Shown one piece after another: positions 7,436 through 38,536 of a DNA stretch of 40,232 bases. Source of the DNA: Octopus sinensis. Its lineage: Eukaryota. The stretch spans positions 1 to 40,232 of the forward strand of contig NW_021835399.1 in NCBI RefSeq assembly GCF_006345805.1. The letters are read 5' to 3'. How positions within the stretch are numbered: position 1 is the first letter of the stretch; each line of letters begins with the position of its first letter. The position numbers and the translations under genes are program-made. A model generated the notes under the pieces. That model was given only the letters and a program-made list of their open reading frames with translations, searched no databases and had not been told where the DNA came from.

Positions 7436-7495
<60 letters not shown>

Positions 7496-7690
7496 TAACT
7501 CACACACACACGTATATATATCTATATACGATGGTCTTCTTTCGGTTTCCGTCTACCAAATCCACTCACAAGGCTTTTGTCGGCCCGAGTCTATAGTAGA
7601 AGACACTTGCCCAAGGTGCCACGCAGCAGGAGTGAACCCGGAACCATGTAGGTGGTAAGCAAGCTACTTACCACGCAGCCACTCTTAGCC
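7190..7690 (-). mobile_element. SINE family A, full length, with internal microsatellite
   Basis: Tail, body, (TACA)n/(TA)n and head are all present in reverse orientation. Confidence 0.9.
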
Positions 7691-15183: not shown

Positions 15184-15632
15184 TACGAGGGGAAACATTC
15201 GCTGTGGGACAAACCCTTAGTAGTTCAAGTTTCCGCGGCTAGAAGCCACTTCATGCGACCCTCAGGCATCAGTCTGCCAACCGACATCGTCCAGTTACGT
15301 CGTACTACCTCGCGGTGCGTCTTTGTTTTACAGTACTTCTCCCCAGTCTATCGATTTTGCGATAGCTGAAACGAAGGAACAGCGTGCTTTCGTGAAATTC
15401 TGTTTTCTGCTTGGGAAAACGACTGCCAAAGCAGTTGTCATGCTTCAGATAGCTTACAGGGTTGCTGCCATGAACAAAACACAAATTTACGACCGGTTTC
15501 TACGCTTTATGAATGGTTACCTGCCGCTTGAAGACCAACGTCGTTCTTGACGACCGTCAACCTCCCAAACGAATGAAAAAATCAGGAAAATTCATGAACT
15601 GATCTTGGAGGACCGTCACCGAACAACAGACA
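15184..15632 (+). mobile_element. Mariner transposon 5' fragment (TIR start plus transposase N-terminus)
   Basis: Begins tacgagggg. The translation KEQRAFVKFCFLLGKTTAKAVVMLQIAY...KTQIYDRFLRFMNG..LEDQRRS*RPSTSQTNEKIRKIHELILEDRHRT fits the mariner HTH region. It is truncated at a SINE. Confidence 0.85.
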
Positions 15633-15636
15633 CAGG

Positions 15637-15860
15637 AGTAGCTGTGTGGTAAGAGCTTGCTTCCCAACCACATAGTTCCGGGTTCAGTCACACTGCGTGG
15701 TACCTTGGCCTGATGTCTTCTACTATAGGCTCGGGTCGACCAAAGCCTTGCGAGTGGATTTGGTAGACGGAAACCGAAAGAAGCCCATTATTGGTATATA
15801 TATATATATATAAAACATACATGTGTGTGTATGTGCCTCTGTTTATCCCTACCATCGCTT
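15637..15860 (+). mobile_element. SINE family A, 5' part
   Basis: gctgtgtggtaagagcttgcttcccaaccacatagttccgggttcagtc...gtagacggaaaccgaaagaagccc. Confidence 0.85.
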
Positions 15861-20300: not shown

Positions 20301-21271
20301 TATCTCGATACACTTCACAACGAGCCAGCGAGGACCTTCTATGTCATCGCTCAACATGCCGGAAATAACAGCCAAATCGGTCAAAAAATTCATCTCACGA
20401 TCTTAAAGAAAGAACATACTGCATATGTTGCAAAATATTGTACGTCTCAAATGAAAAATGAATGGTTTAGGTTAGAACGCTTTTGGCCATAGATTATGTG
20501 TAAAACATGAACAGAGGTGACCTGGAGATAAACGATAACAGCAACATCTTTTCATAGTTGAACATACTCACTAGATTTATGCAAGAAAACTAACTTTATA
20601 GCAACAACAAAAGCGATTTAAACGTAACACCATAACGCATCTGATATATGCAAAAGTTGTCAGAGAACATCAATGGTTACGGATCTGTCCAAAACACCTA
20701 TTAAAGTAACTACATTCTTAAAAAGTTTCTCCGTTACACGTAGAAAGATCACCAAGCAACTTCATACACAAATAATCCTGAAAAATATACGATTTTGCCC
20801 GAAGAATAATAATAAAACTGACAGTAACAAAAAAAAAAGATACCCAAAGAACTGGAAGTAACGTCATCTCGTATCCTAATGTCACAGGTCAGTACAGAAT
20901 GCATTTAAAAATTAACACTTCATAATCAAATAAACTTTGTAACCATGACACAAACAATCTAAAAATGCTGCTTGTTACATTAAAGACATTTTATGTGACT
21001 AAAAGATTTTTATCATCACTCACACCGTTCATTAATTCAGGAAAACACAATTAATAGCAGATCACAGAATATTTACCTGTTTGAATTATACTAAAATCAG
21101 ACGAGACAGAAACAACGGGGGTTGGCTGATAACATACTTAACAAAAGACTGGGAATTTAATTGAAAGATATCGCGAATGACGTTCGTAAGCTAATACGGA
21201 TAAAATACAGAGACACTACAAGTGCAAGCTTTGAAAATAACATATAAGACTTGTAAGCGAAGTACATTAAT

Positions 21272-21350
<79 letters not shown>

Positions 21351-21435
21351 TGCGTACATATCTATATATACATATTTTATATCGCACGTTTCCGATGACC
21401 TCTACTCAACAAAAGTAAATTATACCAGACAAAAC

Positions 21436-21597
21436 GGAAAATTTGTGTTGGTAGAAATAAATGGGTTTCAGACGAAAATGCAATTAGATACCGGTTCAGA
21501 TGTATCGATAATGAATACGGCAACATGGAGTAAGTGGTATAAAAGAACTACTAGGATAGCCCACGGTGTGTCAGGGGAACGAGTTCAATTCTTGTTT
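21436..21597 (+). pseudogene. Ty3/Gypsy aspartic protease remnant
   Basis: In-frame GKFVLVEINGFQTKMQLDTGSDVSIMNTATWSK...RIAHGVSGERVQF contains the retropepsin LDTGS catalytic motif. Confidence 0.8.
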
Positions 21598-21681: not shown

Positions 21682-21926
21682 ATAAGTCCCGGGGTCGAGT
21701 TGCTCGATTAAAGGCCGTGCTCCAGCATGGCCGCAGTCAAATGACTGAAACAAGTAAAAGAGTAAAGAGTTAACTCGACCCCGGGACTTATTCTTTCGTA
21801 AGCCCAGTACTTATTCTATCGGTCTCTTTTGCCCAACCGCTAAGTAACGGGGACATAAACACACCAGCATCGGTTGTCAAGCAATGCTAGGGGGACAAAC
21901 ACAGACACACAAACACACACACTCGC

Positions 21927-21959
<33 letters not shown>

Positions 21960-22120
21960 TACGACGGGCTTCTTTCAGTTTCCGTCTACCAAATCCACTC
22001 ACAAGGCTTTGGTCGGCCCGAGGCTATAGTAGAAGACACTTGCCCAAGGTGCCACGCAGTGGGACTGAACCCGGGACCATGTGGCTGGTAAACAAGCTAC
22101 TTACCACACAGCCACTCCTG
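21682..22120 (-). mobile_element. SINE family A with a locally inverted 3' tail
   Basis: Body and head lie on the minus strand (21772-22120), while the tail at 21682-21770 lies on the plus strand. A perfect 20-bp inverted repeat spans 21682-21701 and 21772-21791. Confidence 0.85.
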
Positions 22121-23169: not shown

Positions 23170-23575
23170 GAGTGGCTGAGTGGTAAGCAGTTTGCTTACC
23201 AACTACATGGTTCCGGGTTCAGTTCCACTGCGTGGCACCTTAGACAAGTGTCTTCTACTATAGCCTCGAATAGACCAAAGCCTTGGGAGTGGATTTGGTA
23301 GACGGAAACTGAAAGAAGCCTGTCGTATATAAACATATATATATATATATGTGTGTATGTGTGTGTGTCTGTGTTTGTCCCTCCACCATCGCTTTACAAA
23401 CGATATTTGTGTGTTTACGTTCTCGTAAACTAGCGGTTCGGCAAAAGAGACCGATAGAATGCGTACTAGGCTTACAAAGAATAAGTCTTGGGGGTCAATT
23501 TCTTCGACTAAAAGCTGTGCTCCAGTATGGCCGCAGTCAAATGACTGAAATAAATAAAAGAATAAGAGAATAAAA
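23170..23575 (+). mobile_element. SINE family A, full length
   Basis: Head, short (TA)/(TG) insert, body and tail ending ...gtcaaatgactgaaataaataaaagaataagag. Confidence 0.9.
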
Positions 23576-24563
23576 GAATAACATTATACAAATCTATTGT
23601 CGTAGAAATCCATCATGTACGCATAAAAGAATCATAAGATATGGTATCCCTAATCCACACACTAACCTCCCGAAATCCCAACATAGATTCGTACGAGTAC
23701 ACTACAATACTACTGACAACAATAAACAGAAGCCCTCCCGCCAACAGGCTTCTGCACAGTTTCCACCAAGCCAATTTCATTCATAAGATTCTAGGATACT
23801 AGTCGGCTCTAAGAAATGGGAGACAGCATTTCCCCAAGGAAAGAACTCGATCTTGATACCACGTAGTTGCGAAGAGAAAGTCTTCACCACACAACCTTTC
23901 AACAATTATCCATGGGGAAAAAAAATCCATCAAATTCAATATATAGCTAAACAAAAATAATCCATAAATATCAGCTTTGTTAATATTAAAGCGAAATCGG
24001 TATCATAGCTATGAATACAATACTATACCAAACAAAATATCAAATGACATTTCCTTATAGCATAACTTAACATATTCTGCTGTGTCATACTATTCACCAA
24101 TAAATCGTGCTTGCCACAACACACGATGTACGTCGTGTTATTTCCGTATAATTTCACACTATATCATGCCATAAATCATATTTTATTTATCGCTTACATA
24201 CATATTCTGAAATATATGGCTTCTAATATATGATACCTAAGCAAGTAATCACACTATAGTAATCAACACCACGCTATATACTTTATATACTACTACACGT
24301 TTGCATAATATATCGTCTGACATTTATAAATTCTTTCTCTCTATAAATTTATGTCATAGCTCTAAATAAGCTACAATTTCTATGGTGGGTAAAGCGTTGT
24401 TACGTATTTTTGTGGAAACTGCCCCTCTAAGACTAATTATGTTAAATTGATGTGAGATATGTTCCACGCTAACGGGTATATACAGCTCGAAGAAGGTTAA
24501 TTCTATATTGGGCATTTTGAACTAACTTTTTCTTTGAAAGTTCGTTCTATTAGTTTACATATA

Positions 24564-24800
24564 ATCATCATCATTGTTCGACCGTGGTCGAGACAATGGA
24601 ATTTCTATGCTACGCCAGACTTCACGGTCCATCATAGCATTACGGAGGTCCTGTTGCTGGATGCCTGTATCCCTGGCGATTACATCAGGGTAGGAGAGTG
24701 TGCGCCCTCTGGTATCGCGAGTAGATGGCTTCCAGAGAAGAGGAGAAATAACCTCGTTTTCAGCTCTACAACAATGTCCAGCAATCTGGACTCTCCTACT
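24564..24800 (-). mobile_element. RTE-clade LINE, 5'-truncated 3' end
   Basis: Translation RRVQIAGHCCRAENEVISPLLWKPSTRDTRGRTLSYPDVIARDTG...DLRNAMMDREVWR fits RTE ORF C-termini. It ends in a stem-loop and (GAT)n. Confidence 0.85.
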
Positions 24801-25001
24801 TTTCACAAGAGATGATACAGGCGGTAGTTTCCCATATCTTTGTACTTTGGTTGGATGACGCTTCTACGAGAGAATTTGAGATTTTTACATGTAAAATCGT
24901 TGTTCCTTTGGTACATTCATCTGCTCCATGTTCTTTCATGCCTAATCCGTACGACCATAAGCCGTATCCCTCTGGCCACAGAGCGATTCTGTATTCATGT
25001 A

Positions 25002-27555: not shown

Positions 27556-27799
27556 ATATGTCTTAGAACATCATCCTTTCAGCTACTGCTCTGAAATGGG
27601 TGACTATAGAACATCAGTGAATATGGATATGATATACCAGAAAAGAAATGTTGATGGTCAAACCTGGAACGACGGTCAAAATTGGAACATTCAACACAGT
27701 AACGTATAGAGCAACGAACGGTTTAACATTATGGAATTTGAAAGTGACGACTTTATGGGAAACATGTACTAAAATCTTTGACTAGTAAACAACATCATT

Positions 27800-28100
27800 T
27801 TTGTTTGTTTGTTCCTTCTCGAGTCACGCTTGGCTCATAAGGACCGATTTCCCGGTTTCCTTGGCGTATAGGTTCCCCACCTAGACGGGACGCCGGTCCG
27901 TCGCAGGTGAGCTGCAAAATGCACGAGGAAAGAGTGAGAGAAAGTTGTGGCAAAAGAGTCAGAAGAAGTTCGCCATTACCTTCTGCCGGAGCCGCGTGGA
28001 ACTTAGGTGTTTCGCTCATAAACACACACATCACCCGGTCCGAGATTCGAACCCCCAATCGCGAGTCCGCTGCTCGAACCACTAGGCCATGTGCCTCCAC
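27800..28100 (-). mobile_element. SINE family D (Meta-domain-like central region)
   Basis: Minus strand has a tRNA-like head, then cctgcgacggaccggcgtcccgtctagg...gaaaccgggaaatcggtccttatgagcc. This resembles my recollection of the MetaSINE domain. Homolog at 37130-37405. Confidence 0.7.
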
Positions 28101-28447
28101 TAAACAACATCGTCGCAAAATACTAACGTACGTATAAATGGTCAGAATAGATAATTTAAAAAAAAACTATAAATCATGTGATACAACTTAGAGAAAATTG
28201 AAGGTACGGCCATTATTTTGTTTTCCTGTATACAACTTCGCACAAAATGAAATTAACAAACATGTTCCTTTAAACACAAGAACCAATTTTAAAATGTACG
28301 CCACATACATATGACGAAAAATAACTAACCATACAACATTGGCCCCCAACATCTGTATCACGTACAGGTTTCATGCAAGACAATTTTTCTCGCATAACAA
28401 AATCATGAAGTGCATAATATATAATTTAATTATTGCATATATAATAT

Positions 28448-28635
28448 AGGGGTGATTGTGTGGTAAGAAGTTTGCTTTCCAACCACAGGGTTCCGAATTC
28501 AGTCCCACTGTGTTCCACATTGGGCAAATACCTTGTACTATAGTCCTGAACCGACCAAAGCTTTCTGAGTGGATTTGATAGACAGAAACTGAAAGAAGCC
28601 TGCATTATATATATATATATATCTGTGTATATATA

Positions 28636-28698
<63 letters not shown>

Positions 28699-30370: not shown

Positions 30371-30606
30371 TATATATATCTTGTTTGTATGATTAGGTTT
30401 ACGACTACAATTGTATGAGCTAGAGCTCCATGTAGATTATCATTATCCAGTCGGCTTCTAGTATAGTGGTTAGTCTCCCACAGTACTTAGTGGTATTGCT
30501 AGTTATGATATATAGAGCATATTTAGTGGAAAATTAAAATGAACACTAGTATAAATATTTAGTTCCTACCTTGGTTTCTCCATTGCAGTTGACTGGGACG
30601 TATATG

Positions 30607-30668
<62 letters not shown>

Positions 30669-30728
30669 CATACACATATACGTACACACACACTTATATC
30701 TGTATATGAGTGTGTGTATGTATCACTC

Positions 30729-30761
<33 letters not shown>

Positions 30762-30763
30762 TC

Positions 30764-30796
<33 letters not shown>

Positions 30797-30888
30797 AAAA
30801 TTATTTGAGACAAAACCACTATTTTGCAAAACAAACAGGAAAGACTTAATCAATACATAAAATTTAATAAATAGTCAAAAAAAAACCG

Positions 30889-30931
30889 CCACTACAATCG
30901 TTTCTTGTCTTGATCGACAATCTTCAGGTGG
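30889..30931 (-). ncRNA. Minimal type I hammerhead ribozyme (left arm)
   Basis: Exact reverse complement of 34192-34234. Confidence 0.8.
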
Positions 30932-33900
30932 ACTTCCAATCTAAAAAATCAAAATTTTAAAATATAAAAATAATACTTTTAAATAATTAAAGTATAATGA
31001 AAAAAATAAGTATAATCCATATATAACCTATATATAATCCATATCGAAAATATAGACTAATTACCACGAATTCCCTAAAAAAAACCATGATAAAACAAAA
31101 CTCTTAAAAACATATAACGATAAAATCTCCCTTTGCTAAACTCTATAACAAACCTATAAAGTAAACCCCCTAACCTAAACATTCACACCAATACACACAC
31201 GTAAACCACAAACTCACGACTTATACACACCTACCTATACTAACTTATAAACCTCAATATACACCAAAACCCACTCCCTCCCCCACAGACAAATTAACAC
31301 ATACATCCCAAAACCTAAATAACAACCCATATACACATTCACACACAAACACAACACTCACACGCAAAACACTCACACACAAAAAATACATATACTCCCT
31401 CACATATACGCCTATACATACTCACTAAACTCGACATATACAACAATACTTACACACCCACAAAAACCTTATATACATTTATGAGCTTTAACTCACCTTA
31501 GCATCTCTAACAAACAACTTGCAGTAACCCAATCCCATTCTCTATGCCTACCTACTACTACAACACTATTCCATTCACATTCCAAGCAACGCTAGTCCAC
31601 CACCCGGTTATTCACGTGGCAAAACGAACACCACTCAAAATTATGAATGAAACAATGTAAAAAAATAACCATCTAAAATATACAAAATACCACGAATTAC
31701 CTAAAAAAACCATGATAAACCAAAACTCATAAAAGCATATAACGATAAAATCTCCCTTTGCTAAACCCTAAACAAACTTATATAGCAATCCCCCTACCTA
31801 AACATTCACACCACAAAAAACCCACACGTAAACCACAGACCCAAGACTTATACACAAACCTATACTAACTTATAAACCTCAATATACACCAAAACCACTC
31901 CTCCCCACACAGCAAATTAACACATACATCCCAAATCCTAAATAACAAACCCAAATACACATTCACACACAAACACAACACACACGCAAAACACACACAC
32001 ACAACAGATACATATGCTCCCTCACATATACGCCCATATACATACTCACTAAAACTCGATATATACAACAATATTTACACCCACACTCATACAGATAAAT
32101 AAATTAATTATACAATTAAAAACTCACAACCAATCTCATATACATAACACTCTTATGAAAACAACAATAAACATCGTAATTAACCAGAATATCAAAAATA
32201 ACATTATGACATAAGGATAAATCAAATACATACTTACAATTCAGTTACAAATTATGAAGTGAAATTAGATTTTTAGCCGTTAAAAAACCAAACAAAATTA
32301 CGTTACCATGGAAATAACTAATGTAAAAAAAGAATACGCGCCATAGAAAGTAAACGTCATTCATAGTATGAATGGAGAAATATAATAAATGGAACTAAAA
32401 ACTATTTCCACGTAGCAAACCAACGCTATTTAAAAAAAATTTATTATGAATGGATTCTTTAAAAACTATCATGAAAATCAATTTTATACATTATGAGCTT
32501 TAGCTCACCCTAGCAACTCTAACAAACAACTTACAGTAACCCATACTCAATGCCTACCTCATTACCACCCTAATCCATTCACAATTCCAAAAACACTAGT
32601 CCACCACCCGTTACAATTCCCAACTCTACCCATTCATTCACAATTTCAACGACGTTCACTTCAACAACTCTACATATAAGCCTCACATATACACCGGAGA
32701 TACACTTACACATCCGTGCGGATGGGTGAGAGTATACATTAAGTGTAGTGATGGGGTTCCCATTTCTAAACACATTTGTACCTGTGTGGTAGTCTCCATG
32801 TGTATATTCACGCACGGGTATAAATACAGGGGGTACACGCTCACTTCATTTACGTGTACCCCTCACATGTACATATGCATACTATATTGGCTCGATATAT
32901 GCAACAATGTAATCACGCCCGTATGTGTGAGCATTCACTGGTTGTGCAATTCACCCATCTGGGTGTGATTGTGTGTAAACTTATCACTGTGGAGGTCGTT
33001 TTTAATTGTATAATTAATTTATTTATCTGTATGAGTGTGGGTGTAAATATTGTTGTATATATCGAGTTTAGTGAGTATGTATTGCGTATATGTGAGGGAG
33101 CATATGTATCTGTTGTGTGTGTGTGTTTTGCGTGTGTGTGTGTGTGTGTGTGAATGTGTATTTGGGTTTGTTATTTAGGATTTGGGATGTATGTGTTAAT
33201 TTGTCTGTGTGGGGAGGGAGTGGTTTTTGGTGTATATTGAGGTTTATAAGTTAGTATAGGTTGTGTATAAGTCTTGGGTCTGTGGTTTACGTGTGGGTTT
33301 TTTGTGTGTGAATGTTTAGGTTAGGGGATTGCTATATAAGTTTGTTATAGGGTTTAGCAAGGGAGATTTTATCGTTATATGCTTTTATGAGTTTTGGTTT
33401 ATCATGGTTTTTTTTAGGTAATTCGTGGTATTTTGTATATTTTAGATGGTTATTTTTTTACATTGTTTCATTCATAATTTTTGAGTGGTGTTCGTTTTGC
33501 CACGTGAATAACCGGGTGGTGGACTAGCGTTGCTTGGAATGTGAATGGAATAGTGTAGTAGTGAGGTAGGCATAGAGAATGGGATTGGGTTACTGCAAGT
33601 TGTTTGTTAGAGATGCTAAGGTGAGTTAAAGCTCATAAATGTATATAAGGTTTTTGTGGGTGTGTAAGTATTGTTGTATATGTCGAGTTTAGTGAGTATG
33701 TATAGGCGTATATGTGAGGGAGTATATGTATTTTTTGTGTGTGAGTGTTTTGCGTGTGAGTGTGTGTTTTGTGTGTGAATGTGTATATGGGTTTGTTATT
33801 TAGGTTTTGGGATGTATGTGTTAATTTGTCTGTGTGGGGAGGGAGTGGGTTTTGGTGTATATTGAGGTTTATAAGTTAGTATAGGTATGTGTATAAGTCG

Positions 33901-34191
33901 TGAGTTTGTGGTTTACGTGTGTGTATTTGTGTGTGAATGTTTAGGTTAGGGGGTTTACTTTATAGGTTTGTTATAGAGTTTAGCAAAGGGAGATTTTATC
34001 GTTATATGTTTTTAAGAGTTTTGTTTTATCATGGTTTTTTTTAGGGAATTCGTGGTAATTAGTCTATATTTTCGATATGGATTATATATAGGTTATATAT
34101 GGATTATATACTTATATTTTTTCATTTATACTTTAATTATTTAAAAGTATTATTTTTGTATTTTAAAATTTTGATTTTTTAGATTGGAAGT

Positions 34192-34234
34192 CCACCTGAA
34201 GATTGTCGATCAAGACAAGAAACGATTGTAGTGG
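34192..34234 (+). ncRNA. Minimal type I hammerhead ribozyme (right arm)
   Basis: ccac-CTGAAGA-[ttgtc gatcaa gacaa]-GAA-[ac gatt gt]-A-gtgg. 4-bp stem I, 5-bp stem II and GUA site at 34228-34230. The stem III segment ACGAUUGU is self-complementary with G.U pairs, as described for minimal PLE hammerheads. Confidence 0.8.
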
Positions 34235-34921
34235 CGGTTTTTTTGACTATTTATTAAATTTTATGTATTGATTAAGTCTTTCCTTGTTTGTTTTGCAAAA
34301 TAGTGGTTTTGTCTCAAATAATATTTTATAATATTTTACTATAAAATTGGATTTAATCCTAAATCTGATTTTTTTTCCCTGTAAATTTGGATATATTCCC
34401 TAATATTTATTATATATATATATATATATATATATAGGCATATATATGTGTATGCATGTATGCTTATACAAACGCTTCTATCAAACACATTTCCAAACTC
34501 ATTCACACACGCAGACACACACACACACACACACAACTCACACATACACTACACAGACACACACACACACATGCACACGCGCTCACACACAAAACGCAAA
34601 AAAGGGGACAGGAATAATAAAAAAAAACATAGATTCGTACGTTCACAGTCGAGATCAGAAGACACAAAAGCCCCAGGGAAATGAGTAAATTACAAGTTCA
34701 CACCTAAAACATATCAATAACATGAAGAACATATTGCATTAGCCAATTTGCCGATATCTTCTATTGATATCAAAATTACCAAACCCCATGAATCCAGAAA
34801 GTAGGTAAAATTATTATGATATATTTCAAGGCTTATAGCATTTCAACCTGAGTCATCACTGCTAGGTGCGCTTTAATATATCCAATAAAAGTTTACCGTT
34901 GATATCACCAACACGTACATA

Positions 34922-36157
34922 CTAGGTGGTGTCAAAAGGCTTCCGGACTAGTTATGTTTAATAAAAGAAAATAACTTATTTACCTTAAATTTTAACATCA
35001 TCTCCTTCGAAATAGTCACCTCACGCAGCAATGCATCGGCTCCAGCGTTCCTATTGCTTTTGGAATCCGGCCTAGAAATCGTTTTCCGTAAGAGAGTCGA
35101 GGAGCTTCTGCGATTCGCTCTTGATCTTGACAACAGTGTTCAAACGGCAACCTTTGAAGTGCCTTTTCATCTTAGGGAAGAGATGGGAATCGGCAGGTGC
35201 TAAATCTGGCGAATAGGGCGGGTGCGGAGGGATACCATGTTGTTTTTTTGGTGGCAAACTCACGAGTGAGGAGAGCTCGGTGACAGGGTGCATTGTCGTT
35301 GTAAAGAACCCAATTCTCTGTAGATGTTAGGATTGCCTGCACGGCAATATATAATTTGAAACCTAACGATGTATCATTATGAAAGGTAGTCAAGGCGGCG
35401 CGCTAGCAGAACACTCTAGACAAAATGATTAGGCGGCATTTTATCAGGCTCTTTACGTTCTGAGTTCAAATGCCGCCGAGACTGACATTGTCTTTCATCC
35501 TTCTAGAATTGGTAAAATAAGCACCAATTGAGCACTGGGTCCAATATAATCGATTGCCCCATCCTTCAAAATTCCTAGTCTTGGCTGCAAACACACGAGT
35601 GAGGAGGGTGAATTGTCATTGTAAAGAACCCAATTCTTCGTAGATGTTAGGATTGCCTGCACGGACGCATACAACAAACCACCAGCAGCAGCAGCAGCAA
35701 TGCTGTTGATTGTCCTCCAGCGATGCTGACGATTTTTCTCCACATTTCTGGGGGTGGCGCTCGTAGCAAGTCTTCGAGATCGTTCATTATCTTCCAGGAA
35801 CGTTCTTCCGCATTCGAAGCGCCCGTGCCACTTGAAACATTGCGTATGACCCACCGCCTCATCGCTGCAAGCTTACCGAAGCATGCTTAATGTCTCTGTA
35901 GCAGACTTCCCAAGTTCAACGCAAAATTTCATTTTGACTCTTTGTTCCAATTTCCTGTCCATGGTAAAAATCGCAGACTACAGCATATACGTGATCACAA
36001 AAACACAAATTTCATAACTTGCAAAGTAAACACAGCGATGTCACTCGGCACGCTGCCTCATGAAGGTCACTGCTAGCTCTCATTGCGCATAAAACCGTGT
36101 GCTGCCATCTGTTGGCACTCTACAGAACTAATCCGGGAACTTATTGATACCACCTCG
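34922..36157 (-). mobile_element. Mariner (DD34D-type) transposon, internally deleted, both TIRs present
   Basis: TIRs at 34922-34947 and 36132-36157 match at 20/26, with TA on both sides. The transposase starts MDRKLEQRVKMKFCVELGKSATET at 35962. Motifs include WVLYNDNAPCH (D-loop) and PPYSPDLAPADSHLFPKMK. Stops, a deletion and an insertion are present. Confidence 0.9.
35390..35583 (+). mobile_element. SINE family B copy inside the mariner, closely related to the copy at 16664
   Basis: Shares private variants and about 31 nt of upstream flank with 16630-16852. Confidence 0.8.
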
Positions 36158-36590: not shown

Positions 36591-37129
36591 CAGGCAGCTG
36601 GCCATCTTCGTAGTCTAATAACCCTGTGAGGGTTTTGCAGTTAGAGCTCTCATACATGTTCTTGTCACTAAATGTTCCTTCTGGGAAACCAAACGAAGCT
36701 ATGGCTATTACCCAACCATCTTGCTCGGGATCTATCTTTCAGTTTCCTGTCGGTTAACCTTGTCTGTTCCTCAGACATTTTAAATATATTTCAAGTTGCC
36801 AAGACTATGTAATAAACAACAACAGTAACAGTAGCTGCGACAGCAACAATATCAAAAGTAACAGATCTAGAATCTCTAACTTCCTGAATGAAGTTTCCTT
36901 AGTATCAGACCTTTTAGTCATCCGTTTAAATGTATATGTGTACAGCCTTCCCTTCCGTCCTCAAAATGTATATACAACCTCTGACATAGATGGAGTTACA
37001 GTCAAGTCATATCCTTCCGCCATTCGTTATAGATTCACAACCACTCCATCGCTAAAAGAATAATCTAGAATACGTCACTTAAAAGAGTACCACCTGCTCT
37101 TACCTACATTTTTTTGTCGCCCTTTTCAA

Positions 37130-37405
37130 GCCTATCCAGGCTTCCCGGTTTCTGTGGCGTCTGTGTTCCTCCAAGCTGGACGAGACGCCAGTCCATCGCA
37201 GCGTTACTCAAGAAATAGGAAGAGAGAGTGAGAGAAAGTTGTGGCGAAAGAGTACAACAGGGGTCACCACTACCCCTGCCGGAACCTCGGCGAGCTTTTA
37301 GGTGTTTTCACTCAATAAACACACACAATGTCCGGTCTGGGAATTGAAACGGCGATCCTCCGACCGCGAGTCCGCTGCACTAACCACTGGGCCATTGCAC
37401 CTCCA
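37130..37405 (-). mobile_element. SINE family D (Meta-domain-like)
   Basis: Homolog of 27800-28100. Confidence 0.75.
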
Positions 37406-38536
37406 CTCTTACCTACATTACTAAAAAGAATTAAATTATTCATCACATTCAGCAACATATTCACACACATACAAGAAGTTCCAACCCTGACCACTACGCT
37501 CTCTTCTTGAAGATTGCATATCTAGCATATCTAGCACTACTTTATCCATCAATAGGATGTGATTTGAGATTGAGATTTGGCTGCTATTTCCAGGAGATTG
37601 GGCAATCGTGTAGATGGCTTTTCTTTGTAGAAGCAGTATGTAGTGGACCCTATCCGAATATTGTTGAATGTTAATAACTAAAGTAGGTTAAATGTTGAAT
37701 ACTGTACCAAAACGGAAGCTAAATTGCAATGCTACAATTTTCATGAGGGTGAGCACTGAATATACTGTATAGGAGGGGACCTGTGGGGGAAAGATCAAGA
37801 GAAAGTCTACGTCATTGGTGAACTGGAATCATTTTAATTCCAGACATAGCTAAATATACTGTAGTTTATATTGCTTACGATTTTTCATAGACATCGTAAA
37901 CTACACCTTGCACCCGCACTCACACACACACATATGCACACATGCGTACGAACATTCACACATATACAACCACATGCGTACGAGCATTCACACATGTAAA
38001 TTTATATAGAAATTCACTATTGATCTTTGTCGTAATCATCATATGTCAACAGCCAAGCACCAAATATTTCATGCAGATATTGCTTGTGATGGTAACGTTG
38101 TTGTAATAGAATATCACTGATTGATTGGTAGATCAATACCTATGCTATTTTATAGTATTAGTCTGTCAACTGAGGCAAGAAATTCCAGTCAACAACTACG
38201 TCAAGCAGTAAAAGGTTATGACGTCAAGACCAGTTTTGATAATAGAGGCGTCACTAAAGTATGATGATACCACCAACGCGTCAGTCAGAGCAGAGTCAAT
38301 AGCGTCGATATAACTACCGACAGCCGAACACAAAGTGCATGCACCTCCGTTCTGACGAAGTCGCTCGTAGATTAAAATAACACTACATCACAATGACGAA
38401 AGCATTTCTGATTGTGTGTGTATGCGCGTATTGCATGCGCATGTTAATATATAGGAATGTGCATCTATTCTGTGTGCATGTATGTATACATATACGTAAG
38501 TATGCTTGTGAATATATATATAATATATATATATTA

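What the first reader, a model, noticed from the sequence alone, without database searches (positions are those of the whole stretch)
30800..34322. 3.5-kb fold-back element with an outward-facing hammerhead ribozyme on each arm
Seen: 30800-32123 and 32998-34322 are inverted copies. The left arm is visibly G-poor (AC-rich) and the right arm C-poor (GT-rich). Each arm has two diverged subunits of about 626 bp, and subunit-specific variants are mirrored between arms (gatacatatgctccc vs aatacatatactccc). The inversion therefore postdates the tandem duplication. An identical hammerhead sits about 90 nt inside each outer end on the GT-rich strand, followed by ATTAAA (34253-34258), and I found no coding capacity. 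Known: PLE pseudo-LTRs carry minimal type I hammerheads, PLEs can form inverted head-to-head structures, and Foldback DNA transposons have long, internally repetitive TIRs. Inference: this may be an undescribed non-autonomous ribozyme-capped fold-back retroelement. Divergent transcription from the centre would give two self-cleaving RNAs, and read-through would give a dsRNA hairpin of about 1.3 kb with a ribozyme-defined 3' end, a strong ADAR/siRNA substrate.
Basis: partly seen in the sequence, partly recalled or inferred. Interest (0 to 1): 0.9.

Follow-up and report, generated by a model that had tools for sequence, protein, structure and literature searches.

The report
Head-to-head ribozyme-bearing retroelement copies
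Two near-identical, non-coding copies of a mobile element sit head-to-head, each with a hammerhead-ribozyme-like motif near its outer end; this layout is already known for Penelope-like retroelements, so the fold-back is ordinary, but one strand of the element has lost almost all its cytosines and that is unexplained.

Summary
30800-32123 and 32998-34322 are inverted copies with mirrored 625-bp subunits, a 5% G / 5% C strand skew and no coding capacity. One identical 43-nt hammerhead-type motif lies about 90 nt inside each outer end.

No Rfam model detects the motif. A structural descriptor finds it only at these two sites, against 0.003 hits expected per random 40-kb window. Two copies cofold into a dimeric hammerhead.

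The arms differ by 4 substitutions and 27 indels, so they are effectively identical; the indels look like assembly noise.

The 874-bp spacer is not a neutral loop. It continues the left copy. The locus is therefore a 2.2-kb copy plus an inverted, 5'-truncated 1.3-kb copy, with 3' ends outward. That is the published insertion layout of Penelope-like elements, whose repeats carry minimal hammerheads.

Best reading (0.55): one insertion of a non-autonomous, PLE-mobilised element. This is a new member of a known kind, not a new fold-back class.

New and unexplained: the spacer holds a normal-composition homologue of the GT-rich unit, and about 90% of its cytosines are T in the arms. The ribozyme motif is one of two C-retaining islands.

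No other copy could be retrieved, so the family-level claims remain untested.

The parts
30793..32123 (-). Left arm: the 3' 1.33 kb of the longer copy (sense strand is the minus, GT-rich strand). Order in sense direction is U2, B, U1, then the 3' terminal region T.
   Evidence: Inverted match to 32998-34322. The shared terminus ..GTCTCAAATAAT(A)TTTTATA was mapped.
32124..32997 (-). The 'spacer', read here as the 5' continuation of the longer copy. X is 32124-32481 (AT-rich, unique). B' is 32482-32610 (84% identical to B). U3 is 32617-32955 (homologue of U1/U2). Composition switches from skewed to normal at about 32694-32715.
   Evidence: (D13, D15).
32998..34329 (+). Right arm: the inverted, 5'-truncated copy (sense strand is plus). 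U2 is 32998-33447, B is 33448-33634, U1 is 33635-34076, T is 34077-34329.
   Evidence: The inner breakpoint is sharp at 32997/32998.
34192..34234 (+). Hammerhead-type motif: CCAC|CUGAAGA|UUGUC-GAUCAA-GACAA|GAAA|C-GAUU-G|UA^GUGG. The predicted cleavage is after A34230.
   Evidence: Descriptor hit at 0.0033 expected per random window. It holds 8 C in 43 nt against a 4.5% background. No Rfam hit.
30889..30931 (-). Identical hammerhead-type motif of the left copy. The predicted cleavage is between 30893 and 30892 on the minus strand.
34253..34258 (+). ATTAAA hexamer downstream of the motif. Its mirror copy is at 30863-30868 on the minus strand.
   Evidence: Use as a poly(A) signal is inference only.
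33491..33535 (+). Core of block B, the second cytosine-retaining island of the arm (9 C in 43 nt). It is the part best conserved with B' in the spacer.
   Evidence: (D13, D15).
30757..30799 (.). (TC)n/(TA)n microsatellite abutting the left terminus. A second (TA)n lies at 34411-34436, about 80 nt beyond the right terminus.
   Evidence: (D16). Weak evidence of a (TA)n target, because SSRs occur about every kb in this window.

Best explanation
The locus is one insertion of a non-autonomous retroelement that carries a type-I hammerhead-type ribozyme about 90-100 nt from its 3' end. The element is most likely mobilised in trans by a Penelope-like element (PLE). The RNA strand is the GT-rich strand. 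A 2.2-kb copy (minus strand, 32997 to 30793) and an inverted, 5'-truncated 1.3-kb copy (plus strand, 32998 to 34329) lie 5'-to-5' with their 3' ends outward. This is the layout that PLE-type integration often produces in a single event. On this reading the fold-back is a by-product of integration, not the design of the element.

**Shown**
- The anatomy and the near-identity of the arms.
- The non-random ribozyme motif and its orientation.
- The absence of coding capacity.

**Inferred**
- Retrotransposition, and the PLE as the partner that supplies the enzymes.
- Self-cleavage, probably only when two motifs pair through their self-complementary helix III.
- Any dsRNA or small-RNA consequence of read-through transcription.

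The internal 625-bp units (U plus B) lack ribozymes. They are an older tandem duplication inside the element.
For: - **Arms effectively identical.** The arms differ by 4 substitutions in 1341 columns, while the internal units differ by 11%. This fits two copies made from one template.
- **Common defined terminus.** Both copies end at ..GTCTCAAATAAT(A)TTTTATA, and only the inner ends differ. A fixed 3' end with a truncated 5' end is the retroelement pattern. It gives the same polarity as the ribozyme motif and ATTAAA.
- **Spacer belongs to the longer copy.** It continues the left copy in direct orientation through B' and U3.
- **Motif is non-random.** The hammerhead-type motif is found only at these two sites, with 0.0033 expected per random window. 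It has a 2-bp helix III with a tetraloop, as in invertebrate type-I hammerheads (PMC7229834). Its 15.1-16.1 stretch ACGAUUGU is self-complementary, and RNAcofold of two copies returns exactly the dimeric hammerhead at -21.4 kcal/mol.
- **Motif keeps its cytosines.** It holds 8 C in 43 nt in an arm that is otherwise 4.5% C (P=6e-4), consistent with constraint.
- **Published precedent.** PLEs form an inverted 5'-truncated copy at the 5' end, carry hammerheads near their 3' ends or in pseudo-LTRs, prefer microsatellite targets and have non-autonomous derivatives (PMC8557442). Dual minimal hammerheads on opposite strands are reported in PMC4209133.
Against: - No reverse transcriptase or GIY-YIG remnant lies in or next to the element.
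- There is no direct pseudo-LTR and no second ribozyme in the same orientation.
- No 30-40-bp 'tail' extension was found.
- The (TA)n target evidence is weak in this SSR-dense window.
- Rfam hammerhead models do not score the motif at all.
- Helix II closes with U10.1-A11.1 instead of the conserved G-C pair, and helix I is only 4 bp.
- No second copy of the family could be retrieved anywhere. Mobility, family membership and covariation in the ribozyme are therefore untested.
Confidence: 0.55

Rival explanations
1. The fold-back itself is the transposing unit. This is the first reader's proposal: a distinct family of ribozyme-capped fold-back retroelements whose copies always have two arms.
For: - Both arms end at the same terminus and each carries the ribozyme motif.
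- The arms are nearly identical.
Against: - The arms are unequal (2.2 kb against 1.3 kb).
- The spacer is a direct continuation of one arm. That is what a full copy plus a truncated partner looks like.
- The layout is already explained by PLE integration.
- Only one locus is available.
Confidence: 0.1
2. A solo copy suffered a one-off inverted duplication at the DNA level, for example by replication template switching or fold-back repair. Transposition was not involved.
For: - The arms are near-identical.
- The inner junction at 32997/32998 is sharp.
Against: - The duplicated segment stops at the element's own terminus on the outside. A random rearrangement would not be expected to do that.
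- The flank beyond it is unrelated to the other flank.
Confidence: 0.12
3. It is a Foldback-type or other DNA transposon with long terminal inverted repeats built from internal repeats, and the hammerhead motif is incidental.
For: - It has long inverted arms with internal tandem units and no coding capacity.
- It lies in an AT-rich site.
Against: - No target-site duplication is discernible.
- The units are 625 bp and there are only two per arm, not arrays of short repeats.
- The spacer is homologous to the arms in direct orientation.
- The ribozyme motif is far from chance and keeps its cytosines.
Confidence: 0.08
4. It is an assembly artefact: one real copy, with the second arm created by chimeric or fold-back long reads.
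For: - The arms differ by 27 indels but only 4 substitutions, and about 16 of the indels lie in homopolymers or short repeats. This is the error profile of noisy long reads, as if one molecule had been read twice.
Against: - A fold-back read gives a spacer-less palindrome whose far flank is the reverse complement of the near flank. Here there is an 874-bp asymmetric spacer.
- The second arm ends at the element terminus.
- The two outer flanks are unrelated.
Confidence: 0.08

Closest known systems
Penelope-like elements (PLEs) and their non-autonomous derivatives (Evgen'ev & Arkhipova; Craig et al. 2021, PMC8557442; Cervera & de la Pena 2014, PMC4209133)
   Same: - An inverted 5'-truncated copy abuts the 5' end of a longer copy.
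- A hammerhead-type motif lies near the 3' end, with a short helix III that suggests action as a dimer.
- The site is rich in microsatellites.
- Non-coding derivatives of PLEs are known.
   Different: - There is no RT or GIY-YIG ORF, no direct pseudo-LTR and no 'tail' extension at this locus.
- The 3' end could not be compared with an autonomous PLE.
- The element has two 625-bp internal units.
- The sense strand is extremely poor in cytosine, which is not mentioned in the PLE papers read here.
Metazoan non-LTR retrozymes (Cervera & de la Pena 2020, PMC7229834; Li et al. 2026 preprint, 10.64898/2026.07.22.740005)
   Same: - Non-coding, low GC, with a type-I hammerhead whose helix III is 2 bp plus a tetraloop.
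- Proposed to derive from PLE repeats.
   Different: - Retrozymes are tandem arrays of 150-450-bp units, each with its own ribozyme.
- Here the tandem units are 625 bp and lack the motif. There is one ribozyme per copy, and the two copies are inverted rather than tandem.
Foldback (FB) DNA transposons
   Same: - Long inverted arms with internal repeats.
- No coding capacity in most copies.
   Different: - The arms are unequal, and the spacer continues one arm.
- No target-site duplication is seen.
- The subrepeats are few and long.
- The arms carry a ribozyme motif with retroelement polarity.
Deaminase-hypermutated retroelement copies (APOBEC G-to-A on the plus strand, ADAR A-to-G; Knisbacher & Levanon 2015, PMC4866542)
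   Same: - Paired homologous sequences differ by dense, one-directional transitions on one strand.
   Different: - The polarity here is sense-strand C-to-T, at about 90% of sites and in all contexts.
- That is opposite to editing of first-strand cDNA and is not the ADAR change.
- It affected the unit before its duplication, and it spares the ribozyme.

Membership tests
Hammerhead ribozyme, type I | Catalytic core CUGANGA ... GAAA ... UH in the right order | tested here: met
   CUGAAGA, GAAA and UA are present, with cleavage predicted after A34230. The motif is identical on both arms.
Hammerhead ribozyme, type I | Three helices around the core, open at helix I | tested here: met
   Helix I is 4 bp, helix II is 5 bp with a 6-nt loop, and helix III is 2 bp with a 4-nt loop. 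The structure costs -5.4 kcal/mol against an MFE of -6.5. The dimer MFE is the dimeric hammerhead at -21.4.
Hammerhead ribozyme, type I | Match to the curated Rfam covariance models (Hammerhead_1 and relatives) | tested here: not met
   No hammerhead family appears at the gathering score, at E<=1 on 4.2 kb, or at E<=10 on 141 nt.
Hammerhead ribozyme, type I | Conserved G10.1-C11.1 pair and loop1-loop2 tertiary contacts | tested here: not met
   The closing pair is U10.1-A11.1. Helix I is short and has no clear loop 1 (sequence). This predicts reduced activity.
Hammerhead ribozyme, type I | Covariation in the helices across homologues; self-cleavage | not testable with these tools
   No homologue was retrieved.
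Penelope-like elements | ORF with telomerase-like RT and GIY-YIG endonuclease | tested here: not met
   The longest open frames are 122 aa or less, with no Pfam hit and no protein homologue. The element is at most a non-autonomous dependant.
Penelope-like elements | Inverted 5'-truncated copy adjacent to the 5' end of a longer copy | tested here: met
   The longer copy runs 32997 to 30793 (-) and the inverted partner 32998 to 34329 (+). They share outer termini and have different inner ends.
Penelope-like elements | Pseudo-LTR (direct partial tandem) carrying the hammerhead | tested here: not met
   The 3' terminal region T and the ribozyme occur once per copy. T shows no significant similarity to B, B' or X.
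Penelope-like elements | 30-40-bp 'tail' extension; microsatellite target | tested here: inconclusive
   The 70 nt beyond the right terminus is unrelated to the element. (TA)n abuts the left terminus only, and SSRs are frequent throughout the window.
Penelope-like elements | 3' end or ribozyme shared with an autonomous PLE of the same genome | not testable with these tools
   The source genome is not searchable here.
Metazoan non-LTR retrozymes | Head-to-tail array of 150-450-bp units, each with a type-I hammerhead | tested here: not met
   The units are about 625 bp and carry no motif. There is no degenerate ribozyme in block B.
Foldback DNA transposons | Symmetric long TIRs made of short tandem repeats, an unrelated loop, and a fixed target-site duplication | tested here: not met
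   The arms are unequal, and the spacer is homologous to the arms in direct orientation. There are two long units only. No duplication is seen at the ends.

The most novel reading that the evidence does not exclude
The element family may pass through a stage in which its sense strand is single-stranded for a long time. Candidates are a persistent or replicating ribozyme-processed RNA, or displaced DNA in an R-loop. In that stage about 90% of sense-strand cytosines, in every sequence context, were converted to U/T, along with some A to G. Only two islands escaped, the ribozyme motif and a roughly 45-nt stretch of block B. This would be natural, near-complete, sense-polarity hypermutation of an invertebrate retroelement. 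Its polarity is opposite to APOBEC-type editing of cDNA.
Probability: 0.15. Interest if true: 0.7.

Novelty: new member of a known kind. Interest (0 to 1): 0.35.

Why it matters
**The fold-back as such.** It adds one more example of PLE-type head-to-head insertion with terminal hammerheads. That is useful for repeat annotation, because such loci break assemblies and are misread as palindromes or hairpin genes. It is not conceptually new.

**The mutational pattern.** This could matter more. A normal-composition relative lies beside a copy that has lost nearly all sense-strand cytosines except in the ribozyme motif and one other short island. If other family members confirm this, it would give a direct, polarised record of what happens to these RNAs or cDNAs during their life cycle. 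That bears on two open questions: whether hammerhead-bearing retroelements have an RNA-to-RNA or long-lived RNA phase, and whether the ribozyme is under selection.

Tried and rejected
1. **Bisulfite-like or methylation-protected conversion.** Rejected. CpG holds 21 of the 66 remaining cytosines, against about 18 expected from composition. CpG cytosines of U3 are converted like the others.
2. **A degenerate ribozyme in block B, which would make each 625-bp unit a retrozyme monomer.** Rejected. T against B, B' or X gives alignment scores within the random range, apart from a short AT-rich stretch.
3. **A PLE 'tail' in the 70 nt beyond the right terminus.** No similarity to the element.
4. **ADAR neighbour preference at the A-to-G sites.** No signal; n is too small.
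5. **Ongoing hypermutation after the U1/U2 duplication.** Not seen. The 40 U1/U2 differences are dominated by A/T changes.
6. **Simple fold-back read chimera.** Unlikely, because the flanks are not mirror images.
7. **Search for other copies.**
   - The window itself: none.
   - Exact-protein look-ups of ORFs 32854-33153 and 35495-35854: none.
   - Concatenated ORF translations against 5.8 billion proteins: none.
   - Pattern scans of JGI metagenomes, IMG/VR and GTDB genomes with the ribozyme, the B core and the 3' end: all zero.
8. **Organism identification through transposon proteins.**
   - The RTE-like fragment matches only short ENA metagenome contigs.
   - The mariner relic reaches 76% identity at most, and then only over 12% of the query.
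   - The guess 'octopus' rests on my memory of the SINE-like repeat, not on a tool.
9. **Rfam 'mir-297/466' hits at the flanks.** These are microsatellite false positives.
Full report
**1. What is in the sequence**

The two arms, 30800-32123 and 32998-34322, are inverted copies. blastn gives 97.1% identity over 1340 columns. A global alignment shows what the differences are: 4 substitutions and 27 indel events, about 16 of them in homopolymers or short repeats. That is not the spectrum of neutral divergence. It looks like residual long-read error, so the arms are in effect identical.

The composition claim is right. The left arm has 5.0% G and the right arm 5.0% C. GC skew is -0.75 and +0.76, while no other kilobase of the window exceeds 0.28 in absolute value.

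Each arm contains two units about 625 bp apart that are about 89% alike. The unit duplication is therefore older than the inversion.

There is no coding capacity. No open frame exceeds 122 codons. The spacer and junction ORFs have no Pfam domain, and a concatenate of the more complex translations finds no homologue among 5.8 billion proteins.

**2. The ribozyme motif**

Rfam 15 reports no hammerhead. This holds at the gathering score on the whole window, at E<=1 on 4.2 kb, and at E<=10 on the 141 nt around the motif.

I therefore wrote a structural descriptor of the kind used for minimal and PLE hammerheads:
- helix I of at least 4 bp;
- CUGANGA;
- helix II of 4-9 bp;
- GAAA;
- helix III of 0-3 bp;
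- UH.

It matches only 34192-34234 (+) and 30889-30931 (-) in the whole window. It matches once in 300 random windows of the same first-order (dinucleotide) statistics, or 0.0033 per 40 kb on both strands.

The parse is CCAC|CUGAAGA|UUGUC-GAUCAA-GACAA|GAAA|C-GAUU-G|UA^GUGG. Helix III is 2 bp with a tetraloop, which is described as the invertebrate pattern (PMC7229834). The stretch from 15.1 to 16.1, ACGAUUGU, is self-complementary with two G.U pairs. RNAcofold of two copies returns exactly the dimeric hammerhead, with an 8-bp helix III, at -21.4 kcal/mol. The monomer hammerhead structure costs -5.4 against an MFE of -6.5.

Three features are atypical: U10.1-A11.1 replaces the conserved G-C pair, helix I is short, and there is no clear loop 1. 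The motif is therefore real as a motif. Its activity is unproven and would probably depend on two motifs pairing.

**3. The spacer changes the picture**

The 874 bp between the arms is not an unrelated loop.
- 32482-32610 is an 84% copy of block B of the arms, in the orientation of the left arm.
- 32617-32955 is a homologue of the GT-rich unit. The unbiased local score is 58 against 22.9 +/- 3.4 for shuffles.

The left copy therefore continues to about 32997. Read on its sense (minus) strand it is U3-B'-X-U2-B-U1-T.

The right arm is the same element cut off at its 5' side, U2-B-U1-T, and inverted. The inner breakpoint is sharp at 32997/32998. Both copies end outward at the same terminus..GTCTCAAATAAT(A)TTTTATA, after which the flanks are unrelated.

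Three things give the same polarity, with the GT-rich strand as the RNA strand:
- fixed outer ends and variable inner ends;
- the orientation of the ribozyme motif;
- ATTAAA at 34253.

**4. What it most likely is**

PLE insertions are described as highly 5'-truncated and often in partial tandems. [quoted passage not shown] Hammerheads lie in the pseudo-LTRs, near the 3' ends. There is a bias for microsatellite targets, and non-autonomous derivatives exist (PMC8557442). Minimal hammerheads in pairs on opposite strands, 100-700 bp apart, were noted when PLE ribozymes were first described (PMC4209133). A 2026 preprint argues that animal retrozymes derive from PLE repeats.

The locus fits this: two copies made from one template in one event, 3' ends outward, each with the terminal ribozyme. 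I put this at 0.55.

It does not pass as a PLE proper, because there is no RT/EN ORF, no direct pseudo-LTR and no 'tail'. It does not pass as a retrozyme either, because the tandem units lack the ribozyme.

**5. Rivals**

It is not needed, and the unequal arms argue against it.
- *One-off inverted duplication at the DNA level.* It would not be expected to stop at the element's own terminus.
- *Foldback DNA transposon.* This is disfavoured by the direct-orientation homology of the spacer, the absence of a target duplication and the non-random ribozyme.
- *Assembly chimera.* This is the reading the indel-only differences invite. A fold-back read, however, gives a spacer-less palindrome with mirror-image flanks. 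Here the flanks are unrelated and the only other long inverted matches in the window are SINE-like repeats and microsatellites.

Gene conversion between arms could also keep an older pair identical. 'Young' is therefore likely but not proven.

**6. The unexplained part**

U3 has ordinary composition from about 32715 to 32997. U1 and U2 have 3% C.

In the well-aligned 230 columns of an unbiased MAFFT alignment, 25 of 28 U3 cytosines are T in both U1 and U2. This holds in all dinucleotide contexts, CpG included. Over the whole alignment, C>T outnumbers T>C by 35 to 4, and A>G outnumbers G>A by 32 to 7. The 40 differences between U1 and U2 are not of this kind; 17 are A/T. The conversion therefore predates their duplication.

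Two short islands keep their cytosines: the ribozyme motif (8 C in 43 nt, P=6e-4) and the core of block B.

The polarity, sense-strand C to T, is opposite to deaminase editing of first-strand cDNA (PMC4866542), and it is not the ADAR change. Possible causes are:
- C-to-U on a long-lived or replicating sense RNA;
- deamination of displaced sense DNA;
- G.U wobble misincorporation when the sense strand is copied.

The direction of change is inferred by parsimony only. Other family copies are needed to settle it.

**7. Limits**

No other copy of the family could be reached:
- none in the window;
- none in the protein collections;
- none in JGI metagenomes, IMG/VR or GTDB genomes.

The organism was not identified by any tool. 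From memory, the abundant SINE-like repeat of the window resembles one common in octopus genomes. If that is right, recently active Penelope families are reported there (PMC13282606). This is a lead, not a result.

**8. Verdict**

- The fold-back is a known PLE-type architecture, and the element is probably a new non-autonomous family.
- The strand-specific cytosine loss is the only surprising feature, and it needs genome-wide data.

Noticed in passing
window 21795-22117 (+), 23170-23478 (-), 7492-7685, 15654-15812, 28448-28640 and others: At least ten copies of a SINE-like repeat of about 300 bp, 80-87% alike, each with an internal (TA)n/(CA)n tract. ARAGORN finds no tRNA. From memory it resembles an abundant octopus repeat, which would place the window in an octopus genome. 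No tool verified this.
   Followed up: partly
window 30800-32123 vs 32998-34322: Differences between the arms are 27 indels against 4 substitutions. This suggests the assembly carries roughly 0.5-1% residual indel error, which would also affect any reading frame in this window.
   Followed up: partly
window 33491-33535 (+), mirrored near 31586-31630: Besides the ribozyme motif, the core of block B is the only other cytosine-retaining island of the arm (9 C in 43 nt). It contains a CACGTG palindrome and is the part best conserved with the spacer copy B'. It may be a functional site, such as a promoter or a recognition site.
   Followed up: no
window 35075-35886 (-) and 15224-15547 (+): Frameshifted mariner/Mos1-type transposase relics. 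The first has relatives with PF01359/PF13358 that reach at most 76% identity, over short stretches only. The second has an HTH_48 hit at E=5e-4.
   Followed up: partly
window 24558-24863 (-): An ORF that I judged by eye to be the 3' fragment of an RTE-like LINE; it has no Pfam hit. Its closest relatives (85% identity) are ORFs on short ENA metagenome contigs (ERZ27289496, ERZ13692193), presumably host DNA in those samples.
   Followed up: partly
window 21271-21597 (+): Weak retropepsin-like ORF (gag-asp_proteas E=0.002, below the Pfam cut-off), probably an LTR-retrotransposon relic.
   Followed up: no
window 30596-30723 and 34410-34535: Rfam 'mir-297/mir-466/mir-3149' matches far below gathering scores. 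They are (TA)n/(CA)n microsatellites, not miRNA genes.
   Followed up: yes
whole window: Very high density of simple repeats: 43 TRF rows, about one per kb, including (TA)n, (CA)n, (TATC)n, (ATAC)n, (AGA)n and (CCAT)n. This weakens any argument from a microsatellite at an insertion site.
   Followed up: no
window 27798-28166 (-) and 37107-37521 (-): A further dispersed repeat shared by these two stretches (both translate to ..LLPQLSLTLSS..). It was not classified.
   Followed up: no
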